Shown: piece after piece, positions 3,570-18,106 of the stretch
Layout of the letters: the number at the start of each line of letters is the position of its first letter
How positions within the stretch are numbered: the stretch's first letter is position 1
Virus record (IMG/VR): IMGVR_UViG_3300023083_000001
Span: 186,001-250,000 of that record
Length of the DNA: 64,000 nt
Reading direction: 5' to 3' (one strand)
Made by a program: the position numbers and the translations under genes
The notes under the pieces: model-generated
Told to the model about the DNA's origin: nothing
Databases searched by the model: none
The model's input: only the letters and a program-made list of their open reading frames with translations

Positions 3570-4001
3570 ATGGGTCTGGGCAGCTGTGCTAGTCAAGAGC
3601 TAACGGTAGTTAAGTCCAAGAAATTCGAATACGCTGAAAAGTGTCACGAGCTGTCTCAGTACTTCAAGACTCAAGAAGGTCTGCCTCAAGCCGACGGTCT
3701 GGCTGACACTTTGGAGTTCACAGCCATTCATTGCGCTTTCGAGTTAGTTGAAAGTGTGGTCAAGCGCTACCCGACCGAGGTCCATGCAATTAAACTGCGG
3801 TACGACTCTGAAGAGGAAGTGGATATCTTGACTTTCCCTAACGGCCGGTTGGTTGCTCGAGGGGTAGACCTCGAAGCTTGCGTGGGTGCAATTGATAAGA
3901 CCTACTACCGCGCTAATCCTCCCGACACTCTGCCACTGGTCGATGTGATCATGTCGGGTTTGCGTGACCTACACAACCAGGGTAAGGTCGAGTTTGACTA
4001 A
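3570..4001 (+). CDS. Hypothetical protein
   Basis: TAAGGAG RBS; last gene before terminator. Confidence 0.75.
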   Translation: MGLGSCASQELTVVKSKKFEYAEKCHELSQYFKTQEGLPQADGLADTLEFTAIHCAFELVESVVKRYPTEVHAIKLRYDSEEEVDILTFPNGRLVARGVDLEACVGAIDKTYYRANPPDTLPLVDVIMSGLRDLHNQGKVEFD

Positions 4002-4012
4002 CGGTAACTTTG

Positions 4013-4048
4013 CGGACACCCTTCGGGGTGTCTGTACTTTCTTTTTTT
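4013..4048 (+). terminator. Intrinsic terminator with cUUCGg loop
   Basis: GGACACCC-TTCG-GGGTGTCT plus T-tract. Confidence 0.85.
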
Positions 4049-4408
4049 GTGATCAGATTAACTTTTGAATGGTTCGTGTATGTTATGTCCGACCAGTAAT
4101 TTTTCTTGAGAGAGGAAGAGGAGGGGTAGGATTTACGAAGTAAATCCGGGGTGGTGTTGGAGAGAGAAGGACTAGACCGAGGAGATGGAGCGTAGCGATC
4201 ATCGACGAAGGTATCTCTTAGGCGAGGCACGAGCCTATAGCGTAGTAATTTTTTACGTAACACTAAAATCCTATTCTACAAAATACCAAACAACAGAGAG
4301 GGGCTGTAAGACCCGCTCTGAGTAAACAATCTTTTTATGCTGTTTGCTCTTACTGAATTAGAATATGATGTATAAAACCCACTGCTATTGATTGAGGTGT
4401 TTTCCGTT

Positions 4409-4972
4409 ATGAATTCCTACGGTGTATTGATTGGATCCATGCTGTCTCAGGCCAGCATGGAGTCGTCTGACAAGTCTGAAGAAGAGCAAGAGAAAGAACC
4501 CAACGGTGCTGCCGACAATGTCGAACTGAAATCCAATCCTGACTACAAACCGCAAGGTGCGGTCATGATCGAATTCACACAGACTCTGGAAGATAGCGAA
4601 GCGCTGCAAGACCTCAAGATGTCACTGGAATCCAAAGGCTGGGTCGTACTCACCCGCTTACCGGTTTACTCCACAGAGGACACCTCAAACGGCGACAGTA
4701 CCGGACGGCCAGTACCTCAGGAACAAGAGACGATCGTCAACACGATCGTCAACGGTATTAACCAAGTCTACGATAGCGCAGGCGATATCTACAAAGTCGT
4801 GCAGCTCGTACGGCCTGAGGATACGGTCGTAGGTAGTCAGGCTGACATTATCTACCTGATGAATGACAATGGCGATGTTAAGGACTATCTGCGTAATGAA
4901 GGACATCTGGTGGAATCCGATACCGATGCCTTACACCTGATGTTGCTGACCGATAACGAGAAAGATCTCTGA
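4409..4972 (+). CDS. Putative virion head protein
   Basis: GAGGT RBS before ATG 4409; acidic N-terminus with ASME and MSLE, the S-x-E type prohead-protease sites of phiKZ-like head proteins. Confidence 0.55.
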   Translation: MNSYGVLIGSMLSQASMESSDKSEEEQEKEPNGAADNVELKSNPDYKPQGAVMIEFTQTLEDSEALQDLKMSLESKGWVVLTRLPVYSTEDTSNGDSTGRPVPQEQETIVNTIVNGINQVYDSAGDIYKVVQLVRPEDTVVGSQADIIYLMNDNGDVKDYLRNEGHLVESDTDALHLMLLTDNEKDL

Positions 4973-5050: not shown

Positions 5051-5884
5051 TCACCACTTAGGCTTACTGCCGAGTGATAACTTCAAGACCTTACGGTACT
5101 TTTCGGTATCGTTAAGTAATGCAATCTTGGTCCAGGTCGTAGAAAGGTAATCGTAGTACAGCTGGTTTGAATCAGCGTACTGGTCGGTGATCTCACGGAT
5201 ACGACCCAGACTCATACCTGCGCGGATTTGACCTTCATCCATGTCTACCACCAGGGTGTTGTGAATATGCGCTTTGGCTGCATAGACGACAAGCTGACTG
5301 AAGTTGTGGTAGTAGGCTGGTTTGATGTCGTTGAAGTTCGGTTCATGAGCCAACGTACAACGCAGGACCGCATCACCGATTATCTGGTTCATGTCGTTGA
5401 CCAGGATCGTGTTAATCCCAACCAATTGAACGTAGGAAGACCCCACCGACTGAACACCTGATGTACTGCGGATAATCTGTCGAGCAATCGACAGCATGTT
5501 GTTGGTATTGGAAGGAGTAATCCCACCACCAGCCCATGATCCCGTTGTGTAGCCGTAGTTGAGTTCGTGAGCGGAGATAATCCGACGACCACCTGTGGCT
5601 TCTCGCGGGAAACGATAGACCATGTTCCAACCATCGACCATCTCAAGCTCAGCCATCATGAGAGGCAGGTACATTTCTGTACCACCAACCAGGTTGACAT
5701 CGACTGCTACACGGCCTTCAATCACGTGTAGTCTGATCTGCTCATCGATTGAGGTGGTGGATACGTTGTCAAAGTAACGATCCCGCCGAGTCGGGTCGTA
5801 ACGTTTGGGCATGAAGGCTTGATCCAGAAGGTCCCTCGGAACTTCAGCTTTAACCCGCATGATTGCAACTTGTACTGGATCCAT
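5051..5884 (-). CDS. Conserved jumbo-phage protein, probably virion structural
   Basis: 277 aa, GGAGGA RBS, divergent from phuZ. Confidence 0.65.
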   Translation of the reverse strand: MDPVQVAIMRVKAEVPRDLLDQAFMPKRYDPTRRDRYFDNVSTTSIDEQIRLHVIEGRVAVDVNLVGGTEMYLPLMMAELEMVDGWNMVYRFPREATGGRRIISAHELNYGYTTGSWAGGGITPSNTNNMLSIARQIIRSTSGVQSVGSSYVQLVGINTILVNDMNQIIGDAVLRCTLAHEPNFNDIKPAYYHNFSQLVVYAAKAHIHNTLVVDMDEGQIRAGMSLGRIREITDQYADSNQLYYDYLSTTWTKIALLNDTEKYRKVLKLSLGSKPKW

Positions 5885-5967: not shown

Positions 5968-6960
5968 ATGTCTGATCTTATCGCTGCACGTACCCGTACT
6001 CTTCGTTTCATCGCTTGCGGCGGCACCGCGATTAACTTGCTGCGTAACTATCGTGACAATAAGCCGAAAGATTCTGATGCGTTGTCAGAAGAGCACTACA
6101 GCTATGTCGATACTTCGATCGCTAACCTCAAAGGTGTGTCGAACGACGAAGTGTATCTGCTGCAAGGCGTGGACGGTTCGGGTTCCGATCGTCCGAAGAA
6201 CGCCAAGGCCATCAAGACTGCGTTGCCTGAAATCATGGTCAAGCACGGCGCCGCTGATTTCAACATCGTGATCTTCTCGGCAGCAGGCGGCACTGGTTCG
6301 GTTGCAGGTCCAATGATCTTGGAACACCTGCTGGGTGACAAGAAGAACGCCATCGCAATCGTGATCGGCAGTCACGACAGCCTCAAGCGCACTACCAACA
6401 CCATCGGCACGCTACAAGGTCTGGAAGCCGCCGTGGCCCGTCTGGGTCGTCCCATCGTAATGCACTACAAAGAAAACGAACTGGACAAACCACATGCGGT
6501 CAACAACCGTGGTCCTCAGTTCGTGATGCAGACCGTGTCCATGCTGACCTCCGGCAAGAACGATCACCTGGACAGTGCAGACGTCAACAACCTGTTCAAC
6601 TTCCACACGGTTACACACCATGCGCCATCCCTGGCGATGTTGAACGTTTACGCAAACGCAGAACAACTGACCGAGAAAGTCAAAGCACCCATCGCGTTCG
6701 CCGCTTTGGTGCGTGACAGCGAAGAAGTAGTCCCTCAGCTCGGCCCGGATTACGACACTGTCGGTTATCTGCCATCGTCCAAGACCGCATACGACAACTC
6801 GTTCTACTTCGTGGTGACCACCGACGCATTGGCCGGCGTGTTCACTGAACTGAACAGTAAGCGTGAAAACGCAACCAAGCAGCAGAAAGTCCAGGCCAAG
6901 ACCACCAGTCTGTTGGGTGGCGACACCAAGCATGACGAAGACACCGGCCTGGTGTTCTAA
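5968..6960 (+). CDS. phuZ: PhuZ tubulin-like spindle protein
   Basis: FIACGGTAIN, GxDGSG and AAGGTGS tubulin/FtsZ signatures; acidic-hydrophobic C-tail DEDTGLVF. Confidence 0.95.
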   Translation: MSDLIAARTRTLRFIACGGTAINLLRNYRDNKPKDSDALSEEHYSYVDTSIANLKGVSNDEVYLLQGVDGSGSDRPKNAKAIKTALPEIMVKHGAADFNIVIFSAAGGTGSVAGPMILEHLLGDKKNAIAIVIGSHDSLKRTTNTIGTLQGLEAAVARLGRPIVMHYKENELDKPHAVNNRGPQFVMQTVSMLTSGKNDHLDSADVNNLFNFHTVTHHAPSLAMLNVYANAEQLTEKVKAPIAFAALVRDSEEVVPQLGPDYDTVGYLPSSKTAYDNSFYFVVTTDALAGVFTELNSKRENATKQQKVQAKTTSLLGGDTKHDEDTGLVF

Positions 6961-11810: not shown

Positions 11811-13973
11811 ATGGCCGCATTGACTAACCCATTCCTTCTTCCGGTTGAGCAGTATCAACGGGACATCGATATCAAGAAAGGTTATCTCCAACAAGTTGCT
11901 AAGTATCTGTCCTGCGCGCTGAAGAAGCCGTACAAGCAATGTCTGGAGTTTGTACTCAACGAAGTGAAGGACCGCAACAGCGAGTTCCGCTTCCGTGATC
12001 CAAAGATGTTGCAGTTGATCCGCAAAGGGGTTGGTGAGCGAGTTCAGGACGAAACTACCTTTCTGGATTACGTTGACGCTATTATCGACACCGGTCGTAT
12101 TGTTTCCCCCTCGCTTGTGGTCTACGAGCGTCCTGAGGTTGAGAAGTCTGTAACCGCTGAATGGCAAGATGAGAACATCAAAGCTCGTAAGCGTTCAAAG
12201 ACTGCAATGTTTGAATTGAAACAACTCGGCGAATTGATGAAGTCGGCTTTGGCTGACTATGACCAGAACGCCCGTAAGATCCGTATCAACTCCGTGTCGG
12301 GTATGCGCGGCTTTGAAGGTAACCCACTGTTTCTGGCATCGGGTCACTCCAGCCTGACATCGATGTGTCGTGCTGCTGCTGGGTACGGTAACGGTACGGT
12401 TGAGCGTTTCCTGGCAGGCAGTCGTCATTATCACACGCCAGAGATTGCCAAAGCTAACATCATGGCCATGATCACCATCGAAGACAAAGCTCGTTTCCTG
12501 GCTGTGATCTCCCGCTACAACCTGGTGTATCCAACAGTTGAAGATGTGGTTTCGATGATCCGTCGGTCTACCGACCTGTACTGGGAAACTCCAGACGAGA
12601 TGGATCTGATCGAAGAGATGGTCAAAGGCATGGATCAACTGGAACGGGCTATCGTCTGTTATTCAGGCGACATGTTCCACTTGGCTAAACTCAATCCAGA
12701 GATTGTGCGCGAGTTGTTTGGCGAGATGATTGCCATCAACATCGAAGACATGGATGACGTGGACACTGCGGCTATCCTCAAAGGTCTGGACAGTACAGAG
12801 AAAGCGTACATCAACGCCCTGTGTGCTAACGTGCTTAAAGGTACGACCCTCAAACAAGTCCAGGCAAACAATCCAGCGGGCTGGCAGACGATCGGCAAGA
12901 CAGCCCAACGCTTTATATGGGCCTGTCAGAAGTATCATCAGCTAATCAATACACTGTTCGCTCCGATGCACTTGCCGCCCACTGTGGCGTCTTTGAGAAG
13001 CATCCAGCGCCGTGTCTGTCTGGCAGCTGATACTGACTCCTCTATCTTCACTACTGAGTATTGGGTGGAGTGGTACACCGGACATCTGAAACGCGGAGAA
13101 GTCGAAGACCGCATTTGGTATCTGGCGACTTACATGGTTTGTCAGTGCATTGCTCACTCACTCGCCATGTTGTCTGCTAACGTTGGTGTTGAGCGTTCAC
13201 AGATCTTCCGTCTGGCCATGAAGAACGAGTATGCGTTCCCGCAGTTCGCACTCACCAACTTGGCTAAGCACTACTATTCTACCATGTCGATGCGTGAAGG
13301 TAACGTATACGACGAGTTGGAGTTGGAGATCAAAGGTGTGGAGCTACGTGGGTCAACGGTACCTAAGCACATCTTGAAAGCTGCCGAAGACCTGATGCGC
13401 AATACTTTGCACGCTATTGACCGGGGTGAGAAACTCAACGCCGGCAAGGTATTGGCATTGGTAGCAAGTTATGAATTGGACACGGTGAAGTCGATCAAGC
13501 GCGGGGAATACACTTACCTGCGCAGTGCTCAGATCAAACCTGACAGTCCGAAGATGCCGTACCACGAACTGTGGCAGGATGTGTTTGGTCCTAAATACGG
13601 CATGAGTATCAACCCACCGTACCCATGTGTGAAAGTCACTACTGAACTGGGCAACAAAACCCAACTCAAGGAATGGCTGGACAACATGGAAGATAAAGAG
13701 CTGGCTGGCCGTATGGCAGCATGGCTCATCAAGTACAACCGTAAGGACCTGCCAACTGTCTTCTTGCCAACCATGGCGATCAAAGGCAAAGGTCTTCCTC
13801 TGGAGATTCAAGATGCTGCGAATGTTCGTAAACTGGCCTACCAGATCAACTCCGGTTTCTATCGCATCCTCGAATCCATGGGTCTACACATCGTCGACCG
13901 CAACAACTATCGACTGGTGTATGACTTTCTAAGACTCGACGATTCGGTCGATGCACCGGAGGTGGTTGTATGA
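11811..13973 (+). CDS. Split family-B DNA polymerase, C-terminal catalytic subunit (phiKZ gp50-like)
   Basis: Motif B QxxxKIRINSVSG, motif C AADTDS, KHYY and EIKGVE. Confidence 0.9.
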   Translation: MAALTNPFLLPVEQYQRDIDIKKGYLQQVAKYLSCALKKPYKQCLEFVLNEVKDRNSEFRFRDPKMLQLIRKGVGERVQDETTFLDYVDAIIDTGRIVSPSLVVYERPEVEKSVTAEWQDENIKARKRSKTAMFELKQLGELMKSALADYDQNARKIRINSVSGMRGFEGNPLFLASGHSSLTSMCRAAAGYGNGTVERFLAGSRHYHTPEIAKANIMAMITIEDKARFLAVISRYNLVYPTVEDVVSMIRRSTDLYWETPDEMDLIEEMVKGMDQLERAIVCYSGDMFHLAKLNPEIVRELFGEMIAINIEDMDDVDTAAILKGLDSTEKAYINALCANVLKGTTLKQVQANNPAGWQTIGKTAQRFIWACQKYHQLINTLFAPMHLPPTVASLRSIQRRVCLAADTDSSIFTTEYWVEWYTGHLKRGEVEDRIWYLATYMVCQCIAHSLAMLSANVGVERSQIFRLAMKNEYAFPQFALTNLAKHYYSTMSMREGNVYDELELEIKGVELRGSTVPKHILKAAEDLMRNTLHAIDRGEKLNAGKVLALVASYELDTVKSIKRGEYTYLRSAQIKPDSPKMPYHELWQDVFGPKYGMSINPPYPCVKVTTELGNKTQLKEWLDNMEDKELAGRMAAWLIKYNRKDLPTVFLPTMAIKGKGLPLEIQDAANVRKLAYQINSGFYRILESMGLHIVDRNNYRLVYDFLRLDDSVDAPEVVV

Positions 13974-16126: not shown

Positions 16127-18106
16127 ATGAGCAATAACGACGATTTCCAAACACGTAGCGACAGCCAACCCGAGGGCCGTCAGCCACGCCAGGAATCCCA
16201 AAGCAACGACCGTGCACAAGCCCGCGACGAGCGCCCTCGTCAAAGCCAACGCAATGACGGTGAGCAAGTGACTCTGGCTGACCTCGGTCGTCTGAACGCA
16301 CGTCCTGGTGTCGGTGGTCTGTCTGACGCAGCTCTGGTAGCAATGATCGAAGCTTTCGACGGCGCCAAAGCGTTCGACAAGCCAAACGTTCCTGAAGCAG
16401 TAAGCCGCAAGCGTTTCCGCGTGCTGCCACTGGATCAGAGCACTGGCCGTACGTCACTGTCCAGCCTCCTGGTCGTTCTGCCGACCGAAATCGCTGGCAA
16501 ACTCTTCACCCTGGTTTACGTTCTGCTGATCGAACAGCCGGGCGGCCCAGGTCTGCGTACTCTGTCTGATCGTGGCGAGCAATTCGAAGCCCTGATCCTG
16601 CCAGAAGACGTGATGACCGATCGTTACATCACCGTCATCAAGAGCCAGGTTGCCAACCTGCAAGACAACTCGAACATTCTGATCGTCGGTAGCCAAGTGC
16701 TGTTGTACAGCACCGTAGCCACCATCACCGAGAAAGAAGGTCAAGCTGCAATCGCCGCCGTCTACGACAACGCGCTCGACGCCATCTCCGGCTTCCGCGA
16801 AAACATCGTCGACGCACTGAGCGACAAACGCAACGACGGCATGCGTATCAACCCTGGCATGATTGCCCGGACTGACCGCCTGGAAGTGTCTTTCGATTAC
16901 AGCGGCAAAACCATCTCCGACTCTTCGGGTCTGCCGGTGCGTTCTGACGTGACTTCTGCCCTGTACTACTCGGCAGCAGCCCCTGAAGAAGAAAACCTGT
17001 ACTCCCGTACTCTGCTCGGCGAAGTCCGCGCTGGCCTGGACCTGTTCCTGACCGACGACGGCGTCGATCGTACCATCCCAAGCTTCGGTTCGCGCCGTCG
17101 CCGCGCTGGTGGTCGTGATGAAGTGGATCAGCCATTCTGGCAGCCAGTGTTCAACATCACTTCGATCAACTGCCCTGCTGGCATTCCGTTCTCGCTGGAA
17201 CTGGCTCAGCTGTTGCTGGCCCAGGTAGCACTGCAATCCAACGACTATCGTTGGGCGAACGTGCTGCGTCCTCGTTCCACCATCGCCGGTGGTCTGAAGC
17301 CAGTCGCACAACTGTCGCACCTGCACCTGCTGAACCCGGACAAGGAAAAGGCCGCCGTCATCAACGACGTCAGCCAGAACATGTCCGATCCCGATCTGTA
17401 CGACTTCCTCGACGTCACTGTCAAACCGGAAATCGTATTCGGCATGGCGATCCCTTCCAGCGGCGAGAAATCTTGGGTGCTCAGCATCTACGAGCGTATC
17501 GCACTGGCAGATCCGCGTGACGCCGAGAAACTGATCGACACCTTGTTCGCATCGGCCGACGTTCTGACCGGTGGTCGTTTCACGAAACTGTACGACGAAC
17601 TCTCCAACGGCACCAACCCGTCGCCGGTTGCGGCATACGGCACTCGCGCCTTCACCGGCACCTGGACCGATACCGACGGCAACGTGCGTCCTCTGAGCGA
17701 ATGGAACGTTCCGGCGGTCCTGACTTCGGTTGGCGTGAAGAACCCAGAGCTGGCTCAAGACTACCAGTACACCTTCGAAGACCGTCGTCACTCGGTCGAC
17801 TACAGCTTGGCACAACGCAACGGCATCCTGTCGCGCATTGTTCCAGGTCTGCACATCGTCGGTACCTGTGAGCAACTGAGCTTCCACCCTTGGTACATCC
17901 AAGCGTTGTCTCTGGCCCTGGCTGATGCGAACATGGCATCGCTGCCAACCAGCGGTGATGGCCTGCAACAGTCGCGTCGTGTGGGTAGCACCGACTTCTC
18001 GGCGTTCGCTACTGCGGATATCGGCTCTTCGCGCCGTCGTCCAAACGACACTGCTGATCGTGGCCGTGGTCGCGATCGCTTCAATGGCGGTGGCAACTAC
18101 TACTGA
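16127..18106 (+). CDS. chmA: Chimallin, major phage nuclear shell protein
   Basis: 659 aa, TAAGGAG RBS, strong codon bias, disordered tails, GLPVRSD motif, directly upstream of the nvRNAP beta' gene as in phiKZ gp54-gp55. Confidence 0.88.
   Translation: MSNNDDFQTRSDSQPEGRQPRQESQSNDRAQARDERPRQSQRNDGEQVTLADLGRLNARPGVGGLSDAALVAMIEAFDGAKAFDKPNVPEAVSRKRFRVLPLDQSTGRTSLSSLLVVLPTEIAGKLFTLVYVLLIEQPGGPGLRTLSDRGEQFEALILPEDVMTDRYITVIKSQVANLQDNSNILIVGSQVLLYSTVATITEKEGQAAIAAVYDNALDAISGFRENIVDALSDKRNDGMRINPGMIARTDRLEVSFDYSGKTISDSSGLPVRSDVTSALYYSAAAPEEENLYSRTLLGEVRAGLDLFLTDDGVDRTIPSFGSRRRRAGGRDEVDQPFWQPVFNITSINCPAGIPFSLELAQLLLAQVALQSNDYRWANVLRPRSTIAGGLKPVAQLSHLHLLNPDKEKAAVINDVSQNMSDPDLYDFLDVTVKPEIVFGMAIPSSGEKSWVLSIYERIALADPRDAEKLIDTLFASADVLTGGRFTKLYDELSNGTNPSPVAAYGTRAFTGTWTDTDGNVRPLSEWNVPAVLTSVGVKNPELAQDYQYTFEDRRHSVDYSLAQRNGILSRIVPGLHIVGTCEQLSFHPWYIQALSLALADANMASLPTSGDGLQQSRRVGSTDFSAFATADIGSSRRRPNDTADRGRGRDRFNGGGNYY

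What the first reader, a model, noticed from the sequence alone, without database searches (positions are those of the whole stretch)
4095..4325. Purine-skewed non-coding element with DNA GNA-triloop hairpins: candidate origin or priming site
Seen: in a ~400-nt gap, a strongly G/A-rich tract (4108-4190) is bracketed by the direct repeat AGTAATTTTT (4095, 4244). It contains a perfect GGATTTAC-GAA-GTAAATCC hairpin (4129-4147), GA-GC-GTA-GC-GA (4188-4198) inside a GAGAT/ATCTC stem, and a TAGGC/GCCTA stem. Known: c-GNA-g triloops are unusually stable in single-stranded DNA and occur in ssDNA signals such as N4 virion-RNAP promoters; TAGCG(T/A), present twice, is the plasmid ssoA CS-6 motif. Inference: this is a DNA-level signal for replication, priming or packaging; an ncRNA is the alternative.
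Basis: partly seen in the sequence, partly recalled or inferred. Interest (0 to 1): 0.6.

Follow-up and report, generated by a model that had tools for sequence, protein, structure and literature searches.

The report
Conserved structured RNA gene in jumbo phages
The purine-rich gap holds a previously undescribed, strongly conserved folded non-coding RNA gene shared by a group of nucleus-forming jumbo phages, rather than a demonstrable DNA replication origin; what the RNA does is still unknown.

Summary
The window comes from a 258-kb nucleus-forming jumbo phage; it encodes PhuZ, chimallin and a divergent family-B DNA polymerase.

- **What holds up:** the purine tract is one of the two strongest in the genome and the only one that is non-coding. 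The 4129-4147 hairpin is real.
- **What does not:** the AGTAATTTTT repeat and the TAGCG(T/A) "CS-6" hexamers are at chance level and are not conserved.
- **Conservation:** a 142-nt core (4102-4243) is nearly invariant in relatives whose neighbouring protein is only 54-71% identical. Covariance models find it in 24 further phage loci (E 1e-3 to 1e-36), always on the same side and strand of the DUF7484/PhuZ block. One of these is the cultured Pseudomonas phage pPa_SNUABM_DT01.
- **Structure:** 95% of paired positions form base pairs, against 39-52% in slid controls. Twenty of 35 pairs show compensatory changes. G·U pairs outnumber A·C pairs 26 to 5, which points to the + strand.
- **Transcription unit:** a conserved TGTATG promoter-like motif precedes the core. 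A covarying GC hairpin plus the next gene's TTTTATGC follows it. No reading frame is conserved, and there is no Rfam match.

Best reading: a stand-alone RNA of about 240 nt belonging to a new family. Its function is unknown. An R-loop primer role is not excluded.

The parts
4011..4049 (+). Intrinsic terminator (hairpin 4011-4036 plus T-run) of the upstream gene 3570-4001. It marks the left boundary of the element.
   Evidence: Terminator scan. An equivalent hairpin plus T-run precedes the element in L005, L062, L064, L065, L066, L067 and L069.
4062..4071 (+). CTTTTGAATG box upstream of the promoter-like motif. Role unknown; it could be an extended promoter or a regulator site.
   Evidence: The 9-mer TTTTGAATG occurs twice in the genome; the copy here is the only intergenic one. 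It is shared by L004, L022 and pPa_SNUABM_DT01.
4077..4082 (+). TGTATG promoter-like motif, the putative start region of the RNA about 20 nt before the core.
   Evidence: TAT(G/A) is conserved 14-20 nt upstream of the core in all groups. TGTATG is 4.6-fold enriched in intergenic DNA of this genome. Transcription itself is not shown.
4102..4243 (+). Conserved structured core of the RNA (models R1 and R2).
   Evidence: Nearly invariant in L004, L005, L006 and L022. CM hits E 1e-26 to 1e-36 in the four short-form groups and 1e-3 to 1e-5 in the DT01 clade. 95% of cells paired and 20 of 35 pairs compensatory.
4102..4117 (+). Helix H1: UUUCUU / GAGGAA with a GAGA (GNRA) tetraloop. It includes two U·G pairs.
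   Evidence: Pairs 1-6 with 12-17 in A9 are 93.5% paired; U·G becomes C-G or U-A in relatives; loops are GAGA, GGGA or GGAAA. It forms with RNA but not DNA parameters.
4118..4128 (+). Invariant purine linker ending in a G-tract (GGGG 4122-4125) just 5' of H2.
   Evidence: A G-tract flanks H2 on both sides in every member, including the DT01 clade.
4129..4147 (+).
   Evidence: 100% paired, with 4 of 8 pairs changed on both sides. Loops are GAA, GCA or GUA. L005 carries a matched 1-bp insertion in both arms. z = -5.5 as RNA.
4148..4174 (+). G-tract 4148-4151 and helix H3 (UGGU 4152-4155 with ACUA 4171-4174) enclosing a purine-rich loop.
   Evidence: 100% paired; 2 of 4 pairs compensatory; G·U in 5 of 11 sequences.
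4175..4215 (+). Long-range helix P4 (GACC 4175-4178 with GG..UC 4210-4215). It encloses H4 (GAUGG 4184-4188 with UCAUC 4199-4203, and the mini-hairpin GC-GUA-GC at 4190-4196).
   Evidence: P4 reads GGUUCC/GGAACU, ACUCC/GGAGU and GAUUCU/AGAAUC in the other groups and is 88.6% paired. In H4, 4 of 7 pairs are compensatory and one G·U is conserved in 9 of 11 sequences.
4219..4237 (+).
   Evidence: All 6 pairs change on both sides and 97% are paired. Other groups have 6-7-bp stems with C-GAA-G, G-GAA-C or C-GUA-G loops.
4241..4257 (+). AU-rich hairpin H6 (CGUA/UACG or GUAA/UUAC). It contains the second AGTAATTTTT copy.
   Evidence: Equivalent hairpins are CGUAA-AAAA-UUACG, UUAA-AAA-UUAA and GUAA-AAAG-UUAC in relatives. 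Assessed by eye only; no pair counts.
4294..4320 (+). Conserved GC-rich terminal hairpin, the presumed 3' end or terminator of the RNA.
   Evidence: Compensatory changes in L005 and L006; different but equally placed hairpins in groups A, B, C and the DT01 clade. The U-run begins only 10-13 nt later in most groups, so termination is inferred.
4331..4342 (+). T-run plus TATGCTG: the genome-wide promoter/terminator motif, here the proximal promoter of the downstream gene.
   Evidence: 79 intergenic TATGC sites, mostly directly after GC hairpins. TTTTATGC is conserved in relatives. The phiKZ terminator motif is a hairpin plus TTAT (PMC10914365).
4409..4972 (+). Downstream 187-aa gene of unknown function (RBS GAGGTG at 4394-4399). 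It neighbours the RNA in the four short-form groups only.
   Evidence: Homologues at 42-71% identity lie immediately downstream of the RNA. The family is absent from DT01-clade loci. No Pfam or PHROG match. The AF2 model is unusable.

Best explanation
Window 4077-4335 (+ strand) is the gene for a stand-alone, highly structured non-coding RNA of about 240 nt that belongs to no described family.

**Transcription unit.** It sits between the terminator of the upstream gene and the promoter of the downstream gene. It is probably transcribed by the phage's own non-virion RNA polymerase from a TGTATG-type promoter (4077-4082). It probably ends at the conserved GC hairpin (4294-4320) in front of the next TTTTATGC signal.

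**Fold.** The 142-nt core (4102-4243) folds into:
- a GNRA-capped hairpin
- three hairpins capped by GNA triloops
- a purine-looped hairpin
- a long-range helix

Invariant purine and G-tract segments remain between these helices.

**Shown.** Nucleotide-level conservation far above that of the flanking genes. Covariation in every helix. Single copy per genome. Fixed position and strand next to the DUF7484/PhuZ block. Absence of a conserved reading frame.

**Inferred.** That it is transcribed, its ends, and its action. My most likely mechanism is that the rigid helices present the invariant purine and G-tract segments as a specific binding surface for a phage or host protein, making a small RNP, scaffold or decoy. 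I rate this step as weakly supported.
For: **Conservation and distribution**
- The core is almost invariant in L004, L005, L006 and L022. Their downstream protein is only 54-71% identical.
- R1 and R2 find one copy in the window's own genome.
- They find 9 further strong hits (E 1e-26 to 1e-29) and 10 weaker ones (E 2e-5 to 6e-3). All lie on the same side and strand of DUF7484.
- One hit is in an unannotated gap of phage pPa_SNUABM_DT01.

**Structure**
- 95.0% of cells are paired, against 77% in shuffles and 39-52% in slid controls.
- 20 of 35 pairs change on both sides.
- Compensatory changes were already visible in a plain MAFFT alignment.

**Strand and molecule**
- 26 G·U cells against 5 A·C cells.
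- H1, H4 and H5 fold in the covariation-supported way with RNA parameters but not with DNA parameters.

**Unit boundaries**
- A terminator lies upstream.
- TAT(G/A) is conserved 14-20 nt before the core, and a hairpin plus T(T)TATGC is conserved after it.
- TGTATG and TATGC are 3-4.6-fold enriched in intergenic DNA.

**Not coding**
- There are 1-nt indels between relatives.
- Most members have stops in all three sense frames, and nine also in all three antisense frames.
- The ATG of the 46-aa ORF is AAG in L004.

**Not a known family**
- No Rfam match in the window or in 8 homologous loci.
Against: - There are no expression data.
- The terminal hairpin is separated from the U-run by 10-13 nt in most groups. 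Read-through into the downstream gene is therefore possible.
- The CM-based alignments lean towards the model's structure.
- No protein partner is identified. The neighbouring 187-aa gene is not universally linked to the RNA and its model is uninformative.
- The family is not detected in phiKZ, Erwinia phage AH06, Xanthomonas phage RTH11 or several other DUF7484-bearing loci.
- The purine and G-cluster composition is also what an R-loop-forming primer would have.
Confidence: 0.7

Rival explanations
1. Origin or primer RNA. The purine- and G-rich transcript stays hybridised to its C/T-rich template as an R-loop. After RNase H processing it primes DNA synthesis, in the manner of ColE1 RNA II, T4 oriF/oriG, mitochondrial CSB II or a retroviral polypurine tract. 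This is the RNA-mediated version of the reader's origin or priming idea.
For: - 4108-4190 is the strongest non-coding purine tract of the genome (78% purine, 46% G, 7% C).
- G-tracts flank H2 in every member.
- There is a single copy per genome.
- It has its own promoter-like motif.
- An AT-rich stretch follows the core.
- It lies 7.6 kb upstream of the DNA polymerase gene.
- Chimalliviruses lack a recognisable primase and carry an RNase H in the replisome. The authors of PMC13648698 speculate that RNA-DNA hybrids start replication.
Against: - An R-loop needs composition, not near-invariant sequence or covarying helices.
- The conserved hairpins would compete with hybrid formation.
- There is no informative GC-skew inflection. 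The cumulative maximum, not the minimum, lies near the locus and follows gene orientation.
- The family is not detected in many chimalliviruses, which would also need an origin.
- No iterons were found.
Confidence: 0.13
2. SD/GGA-mimic decoy. The 7-12 GGA or Shine-Dalgarno-like motifs titrate a CsrA/RsmA-type translational repressor, or 30S subunits, as RsmY/RsmZ/CsrB do. This would favour translation of phage mRNAs.
For: - Every member carries 5-12 GGA motifs in 142-185 nt.
- RsmA/RsmN recognise GGA motifs and are sponged by multi-GGA sRNAs in Pseudomonas, the host genus of pPa_SNUABM_DT01 (PMC8545117).
Against: - The GGA count does not exceed dinucleotide-matched shuffles in any member (p 0.06-0.97).
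- Most hairpin loops are GNA or GNRA, not GGA. Several GGA motifs lie inside stems.
- No Rfam Csr/Rsm match, even at E up to 10.
Confidence: 0.08
3. Cis-acting leader. The fold is a sensor such as a riboswitch or protein-binding attenuator. It controls read-through of the 4294-4320 hairpin into the downstream gene.
For: - The order promoter, structured domain, GC hairpin with U-run, then gene matches attenuators.
- The hairpin is not a canonical terminator, so read-through is plausible.
Against: - A second promoter motif lies between the hairpin and the gene in all groups.
- The downstream gene differs between the clades.
- The terminator's 3' arm pairs no better with its own core than with the cores of other groups, so there is no co-evolving antiterminator.
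Confidence: 0.06
4. Single-stranded-DNA signal. The GNA-triloop hairpins extrude from DNA as a single-strand origin (ssoA-like), an N4-type hairpin promoter or a packaging site.
For: - Three hairpins keep C-GNA-G-type triloops across the family. From my own knowledge, this loop type is very stable in DNA; that stability is not tested here.
Against: - The CS-6 hexamers are at chance frequency and are not conserved.
- G·U pairs are conserved, 26 cells against 5 A·C.
- H1, H4 and H5 do not fold in the conserved registers with DNA parameters.
- The phage is a dsDNA chimallivirus; from established knowledge it uses multisubunit RNA polymerases, not an N4-type enzyme.
- The element is flanked by transcription signals.
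Confidence: 0.02
5. Protein-coding: the minus-strand ORF 3949-4263 (104 aa) or the plus-strand ORF 4185-4325 (46 aa).
For: - Both frames are open in the window.
Against: - The minus-strand ORF overlaps the upstream gene's end and its terminator.
- Pyrimidine-rich strands lack stop codons by composition alone.
- Nine relatives have stops in all antisense frames of the core, and most have stops in all sense frames.
- There are 1-nt indels between close relatives.
- The ATG at 4185 is AAG in L004 and L022.
Confidence: 0.01

Closest known systems
Small RNAs of phiKZ-like phages: 201phi2-1 sRNA005 and the phiKZ sRNA upstream of gp182 (PMC11512511); phiKZ Grad-seq ncRNAs (PMC8545117)
   Same: Short non-coding transcripts of nucleus-forming jumbo phages. 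They are conserved by position next to a conserved gene and are delimited by phage promoters and hairpin terminators.
   Different: - Those are 5'- or 3'-UTR-derived pieces beside a tail gene or PHIKZ298.
- This one has its own promoter-like motif, lies in the PhuZ/DUF7484 block, is much more structured and purine-rich, and is not detected in phiKZ by model R2.
- No sequence comparison with sRNA005 was possible because the figures are not held.
R-loop primer RNAs: ColE1 RNA II, T4 oriF/oriG transcripts, mitochondrial CSB II, retroviral polypurine tract
   Same: A G/A-rich transcript with a dedicated promoter. As with RNA II, it has a conserved fold. The host system is a replisome with an integrated RNase H and no primase (PMC13648698).
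   Different: - No evidence here of a hybrid, of RNase H processing or of DNA starts.
- There is no skew signal.
- Sequence invariance exceeds what hybrid formation needs.
- The resemblance of the linker to a retroviral PPT is a recollection, not a test.
Csr/Rsm sponge RNAs (RsmY, RsmZ, CsrB)
   Same: An RNA of about 120-250 nt with many GGA motifs separated by stable hairpins and ending in a terminator hairpin.
   Different: - The GGA motifs are explained by composition.
- They are mostly outside hairpin loops.
- There is no Rfam similarity.
ssDNA hairpin signals: plasmid ssoA with CS-6, phage N4 virion-RNAP promoters, d(GCGAAGC)-type mini-hairpins
   Same: Short stems closed by C-G around GNA triloops. 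L004 even reads GCGAAGC where the window reads GCGTAGC.
   Different: - The CS-6 hexamer is not conserved and sits at chance frequency.
- The helices contain conserved G·U pairs and a GNRA tetraloop.
- The context is a transcription unit in a dsDNA phage.

Membership tests
Any Rfam 15 family | Covariance-model score at or above the family's gathering threshold | tested here: not met
   No hit in the whole window. No hit in 8 homologous loci. Only chance snoRNA and MS2 matches at E 2.6-7.9 in 4000-4420.
Independent sRNA gene (promoter + structured body + terminator) | Conserved promoter motif upstream of the body | tested here: met
   TAT(G/A) lies 14-20 nt before the core in all groups. TGTATG is enriched 4.6-fold in intergenic DNA. 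Activity as a promoter is not shown.
Independent sRNA gene (promoter + structured body + terminator) | Intrinsic terminator (GC hairpin directly followed by a U-run) at the 3' end | tested here: inconclusive
   A GC hairpin is conserved with covariation. In the window and groups A and B the U-run starts 10-13 nt later; it is adjacent in L069 and most of the DT01 clade. The scan did not call it.
Independent sRNA gene (promoter + structured body + terminator) | Detectable discrete transcript | not testable with these tools
No transcriptome of a carrier phage is known to me.
Structured RNA (covariation criterion) | Base pairs maintained by compensatory changes above controls | tested here: met
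   95.0% paired against 77.3% in shuffles (0 of 500 reach it) and 39-52% in slid controls. 20 of 35 pairs change on both sides.
Plasmid single-strand origin ssoA | Conserved CS-6 hexamer TAGCG(T/A) in the loop of a long hairpin | tested here: not met
   The hexamers are at genome-wide chance frequency. The first becomes TAACGA or AAGCGA and the second TACGAC in relatives. Neither lies in a terminal loop of a long hairpin.
Plasmid single-strand origin ssoA | Rolling-circle replicon context (Rep gene, double-strand origin) | not tested
   No Rep family search was run. The genome is a 258-kb chimallivirus with a family-B polymerase.
N4-type hairpin promoter | N4-like single-subunit virion RNA polymerase in the genome | not tested
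   Not searched. From established knowledge, the phage belongs to the nucleus-forming group (chimallin and PhuZ), which uses multisubunit RNAPs.
Csr/Rsm sponge RNA | GGA motifs enriched and displayed in hairpin loops | tested here: not met
   GGA counts equal dinucleotide-shuffle expectation. The loops are GNA or GNRA.
Replication origin / R-loop primer | Persistent RNA-DNA hybrid and DNA synthesis starts at the site; copy-number peak early in infection | not testable with these tools
   No read data were available. Composition is compatible.
Replication origin / R-loop primer | Strand-compositional (GC-skew) switch at the site | tested here: inconclusive
   Cumulative skew rises weakly across the genome with gene orientation. 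Its maximum lies near 194-200 kb and the element is at 190 kb. There is no sharp inflection.
Transcription-attenuating leader / riboswitch | Alternative (antiterminator) pairing that co-evolves with the terminator | tested here: not met
   Duplex energies of each terminator 3' arm with its own core are no better than with the cores of other groups.
Protein-coding gene | Reading frame kept open in relatives | tested here: not met
   There are stops in all sense frames in most members and in all antisense frames in nine. Frame-breaking 1-nt indels occur between relatives.

The most novel reading that the evidence does not exclude
The RNA is the replication primer, and so marks the origin, of these primase-less, nucleus-forming phages. 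A dedicated promoter makes a folded, polypurine and G-tract transcript that forms an RNase H-resistant R-loop. The replisome's built-in RNase H (Rhc) trims it into a primer. This would be a ColE1-RNA II or retroviral-PPT logic in a giant dsDNA phage.
Probability: 0.13. Interest if true: 0.85.

Novelty: new member of a known kind. Interest (0 to 1): 0.6.

Why it matters
- **Few such RNAs are known.** Very few phage non-coding RNAs are described, and almost none are defined by covariation. PMC8545117 counted 21 in 2021.
- **Strength of selection.** This RNA is more conserved than the neighbouring proteins compared here. It spans several lineages of nucleus-forming jumbo phages and always sits in the PhuZ/DNA-polymerase/chimallin part of the genome. 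Selection on it is therefore strong and its role is probably central to infection.
- **It can be tested.** It occurs in a cultured Pseudomonas aeruginosa phage (pPa_SNUABM_DT01), so it is directly testable.
- **Link to an open question.** These phages separate transcription from translation. They lack a primase and carry an RNase H in the replisome. A dedicated purine-rich RNA is therefore a concrete candidate for how replication starts (PMC13648698).
- **Practical use.** Models R1 and R2 give annotators a way to label an otherwise empty gap.

Tried and rejected
- **Similarity searches that found nothing.** blastn of the gap and of the DT01 element against 50,697 phage records found only DT01 itself. 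Single-protein locus searches with the two flanking genes and with PhuZ in IMG/VR gave no relatives.
- **Pattern scans.** The exact 19-nt hairpin pattern in IMG/VR gave two unrelated AT-rich phages, which are chance matches. The two-block DNA pattern gave 4 IMG/VR and 41 metagenome hits. Only the window's own contig (L033) and L022 were real by nhmmer.
- **tRNA/tmRNA.** None found.
- **Whole-region fold energy.** Not significant on either strand.
- **Direct repeat as a bracket.** At chance level and not conserved.
- **GGA or CsrA-site enrichment.** Not above composition.
- **Antiterminator co-evolution.** Absent.
- **Long-range pairing of the purine linker with the pyrimidine stretch before H5.** Possible in every member, but no own-versus-other advantage, so unsupported.
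- **Linkage to the 187-aa gene.** Limited to the short-form groups. Its AlphaFold model had pLDDT 41.6 and was not searched further.
- **Wider reach of the family.** R2 gave nothing in phiKZ, AH06, RTH11 and two further complete IMG/VR genomes. With filters off it gave nothing significant in L071, L081 and L089.
- The large representative protein search was not used.
- **Human sequence.** No contig looked human.
Full report
**Where the window lies.** The window is bases 186,001-250,000 of a 258,357-bp IMG/VR virus record. The record's ends overlap by exactly 127 bp. Identified genes are:

| Gene | Window coordinates | Source |
|---|---|---|
| PhuZ tubulin | 5968-6960 | |
| DUF7484 protein | 5051-5884, minus strand | |
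| Divergent family-B DNA polymerase | 11811-13973 | |
| Chimallin | 16127-18106 | |

This makes it a nucleus-forming (Chimalliviridae-type) jumbo phage. Its PhuZ is at most 35% identical to that of any phage in GenBank.

**Checking the observation.**
- The gap runs from the stop at 4001 to the ATG at 4409.
- Positions 4108-4190 are 78% purine, with 46% G and 7% C.
- In 80-nt windows the tract ties for the most purine-skewed in the genome, at 0.78 against a mean of 0.51 and an sd of 0.05.
- It is the only top-ranked purine tract outside a called gene. The others examined encode Lys/Glu-rich proteins.
- The perfect 8-bp, 3-nt-loop hairpin at 4129-4147 occurs in 0.4% of dinucleotide shuffles of the gap.

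Other items do not hold up.
- A direct repeat of 10 nt or more occurs in 9% of shuffles. AGTAATTTTT occurs nowhere else in the genome, but its first copy is not conserved in relatives.
- TAGCGT and TAGCGA occur 118 and 91 times in the genome, about the random expectation.
- The folding energy of the whole region is unremarkable on both strands.

**Relatives.** DNA searches of phage records found nothing. The downstream 187-aa protein has three homologues at 71, 61 and 54% identity on Logan contigs.

Aligning the intergenic regions gave the key result. From about 4102 to 4243 the sequence is almost invariant in all four genomes, far more conserved than the flanking protein. The upstream context differs: two relatives have a minus-strand gene there. 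The few differences are compensatory:
- A-U becomes G-C in the 4129-4147 hairpin (L004).
- A matched 1-bp insertion appears in both arms (L005).
- GC-GUA-GC becomes GU-GUA-AC (L006).
- UAGGC/GCCUA is replaced by a UAGCGAC/GUCGCUA stem (L005).

A covariance model of the core (R1) finds one copy in the window's own genome. I fetched 52 IMG/VR loci through the neighbouring DUF7484 gene. R1 and the second-generation model R2 find:
- nine strong matches (E 1e-26 to 1e-29)
- ten weaker ones (E 2e-5 to 6e-3)

All lie on the same side and strand of DUF7484. One of the weaker matches lies in an unannotated 400-nt gap of the cultured Pseudomonas aeruginosa phage pPa_SNUABM_DT01 (MW735835 119,654-119,838). 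This "DT01 clade" has a longer form of about 180 nt with an enlarged H2 loop and middle domain.

The family was not detected in phiKZ, Erwinia phage AH06, Xanthomonas phage RTH11 or several other DUF7484-bearing loci.

**Structure.** Counts were made on 11 distinct sequences of the four short-form groups (one search is similar).

| Measure | Observed | Control |
|---|---|---|
| Paired cells forming standard pairs | 95.0% | 77.3% in column shuffles (0 of 500 reach it); 39-52% with the partner slid 1-3 columns |
| Pairs changed on both sides | 20 of 35 | 12.5 (shuffle mean) |

These alignments are fitted to the model, which inflates pairing. The slid controls, and the compensatory changes already seen in a plain MAFFT alignment, argue that the signal is real.

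The helices are:
- **H1**, 4102-4117, with a GNRA tetraloop
- **H2**, 4129-4147, with a C-GNA-G triloop reading GAA, GCA or GUA
- **H3**, 4152-4155 with 4171-4174, around a purine loop
- **P4**, a long-range helix, 4175-4178 with 4210-4215; it reads GGUUCC/GGAACU, ACUCC/GGAGU and GAUUCU/AGAAUC in the other groups
- **H4**, 4184-4188 with 4199-4203, plus the GC-GNA-GC mini-hairpin
- **H5**, 4219-4237

Between the helices lie invariant purine segments. G-tracts flank H2 on both sides in every member.

**Strand and molecule.** In the paired cells there are 26 G·U pairs and 5 A·C pairs. One G·U is kept in 9 of 11 sequences. The + strand is therefore the one that folds.

With RNA parameters, H1, H4 and H5 fold in the covariation-supported registers. 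With DNA parameters, H1 does not form and H4 and H5 fold differently. The DNA parameter set may undervalue GNA triloops. Even so, conserved wobble pairs and a GNRA tetraloop are marks of RNA.

**Transcription unit.** This genome has a pervasive intergenic signal: a GC hairpin followed by (C)TGTATGC(T/C)G. TGTATG is found 57 times in intergenic DNA against 12.5 expected. This parallels the phiKZ terminator motif, a hairpin plus TTAT (PMC10914365).

The order of features across the gap is:
1. the upstream gene's terminator (4011-4049)
2. a CTTTTGAATG box (4062-4071), shared even with DT01
3. TGTATG (4077-4082)
4. the core
5. an AU hairpin that contains the second AGTAATTTTT copy (4241-4257)
6. 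an AT-rich spacer
7. a GC hairpin (4294-4320) that covaries or is replaced by other hairpins in every group
8. TTTTATGC (4332-4340)
9. the RBS and the ATG at 4409

The same order holds in all groups. I infer a separate transcript of about 240 nt. The gap of 10-13 nt between hairpin and U-run leaves read-through possible.

**Not coding.** Close relatives differ by 1-nt indels. Most members have stops in all three sense frames, and nine have stops in all three antisense frames. The ATG of the 46-aa ORF is AAG in L004 and L022.

**Function: what I tested.**
- *GGA-rich sponge for CsrA/RsmA or ribosomes.* There are 5-12 GGA motifs per member, but never more than composition-matched shuffles give. 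Loops are GNA or GNRA. There is no Rfam Csr/Rsm similarity.
- *Attenuator.* No co-evolving antiterminator, a second promoter lies before the gene, and the downstream genes differ between clades.
- *Partner protein next door.* The 187-aa family accompanies only the short-form RNA and could not be modelled.
- *Origin.* GC skew is uninformative and no iterons were found.

However, chimalliviruses lack a primase and have an RNase H in the replisome. RNA-DNA hybrids have been proposed as their replication starts (PMC13648698). A dedicated G/A-rich transcript is the kind of RNA that forms stable R-loops, so this reading stays open. Against it, hybrid formation does not need near-invariant sequence or covarying helices.

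My best mechanism is a compact RNA whose helices present invariant purine and G-tract segments to a specific protein, as an RNP, scaffold or decoy. That last step is inference.

**Comparison with known things.** There is no Rfam family.
- The nearest kin in kind are the UTR-derived sRNAs of phiKZ and 201phi2-1 (PMC11512511, PMC8545117). This RNA differs in location, independence and structure, and R2 does not match phiKZ.
- It is not an ssoA: CS-6 is not conserved and sits at chance frequency.
- It is not shown to be an N4-type promoter.
- It resembles R-loop primers only in composition and in having its own promoter.

**Verdict.** This is a real and strongly selected element. It is a new family of structured phage RNA with unknown function. 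Its preferred DNA-level reading is unsupported, and its alternative, an ncRNA, is the better fit.

**Limits.** E-values from the shortened CM calibration are rough. The distribution was sampled only through 52 DUF7484-anchored loci.

Noticed in passing
whole genome G000; e.g. window 4294-4342: About 80 intergenic sites carry a GC-rich hairpin directly followed by (C)TGTATGC(T/C)G. Many are palindromic (CATACAG-hairpin-CTGTATG), so the motif reads the same on both strands. This is probably a combined terminator and late-type promoter signal like the phiKZ hairpin+TTAT motif.
   Followed up: partly
G000 ends (outside the window): The 258,357-bp record has an exact 127-bp terminal overlap. This looks like an assembly k-mer overlap of a circular or permuted map rather than a biological terminal repeat.
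   Followed up: no
window 4062-4071: A CTTTTGAATG box lies just upstream of the RNA's promoter-like motif. It is the only intergenic copy in this genome, yet it is shared with L004, L022 and the distant phage pPa_SNUABM_DT01. It may be a regulator site or an extended promoter.
   Followed up: partly
L090:3441-3694 (- strand): An AT-rich chimallivirus contig has a purine-rich non-coding stretch of about 250 nt (up to 77% purine) after a terminator and a TGTATG motif, on the same side of DUF7484. R2 cannot align it. It may be a very divergent counterpart.
   Followed up: partly
L004:7240-7593 and L006:7240-7593 (- strand): Two relatives carry a 117-aa minus-strand gene between the upstream block and the RNA, where the window has the 143-aa plus-strand gene 3570-4001. 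That gene has no homologue in the 5.8-billion-protein word search. So the RNA keeps its right-hand neighbour but not its left-hand one.
   Followed up: no
window 4122-4125 and 4148-4151; all family members: Runs of 3-5 G sit immediately on both sides of hairpin H2 in every member of both clades. The DT01 clade has six or more G3+ runs around H2, enough for a G-quadruplex. This was not tested.
   Followed up: no
window 4365-4380: The leader of the downstream gene contains ATGATGTATAAAAC. This gave the weak chance C/D-box snoRNA matches in Rfam. TATGATGTA is conserved in L004 and L005, and a similar ATGTATAAAACC follows another TATGC promoter at genome position 51720.
   Followed up: no
window 11811-13973 and 16127-18106: A divergent family-B DNA polymerase and chimallin lie 7.6 and 12 kb downstream of the element. 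The RNA therefore sits in the early or replication-nucleus gene block.
   Followed up: yes
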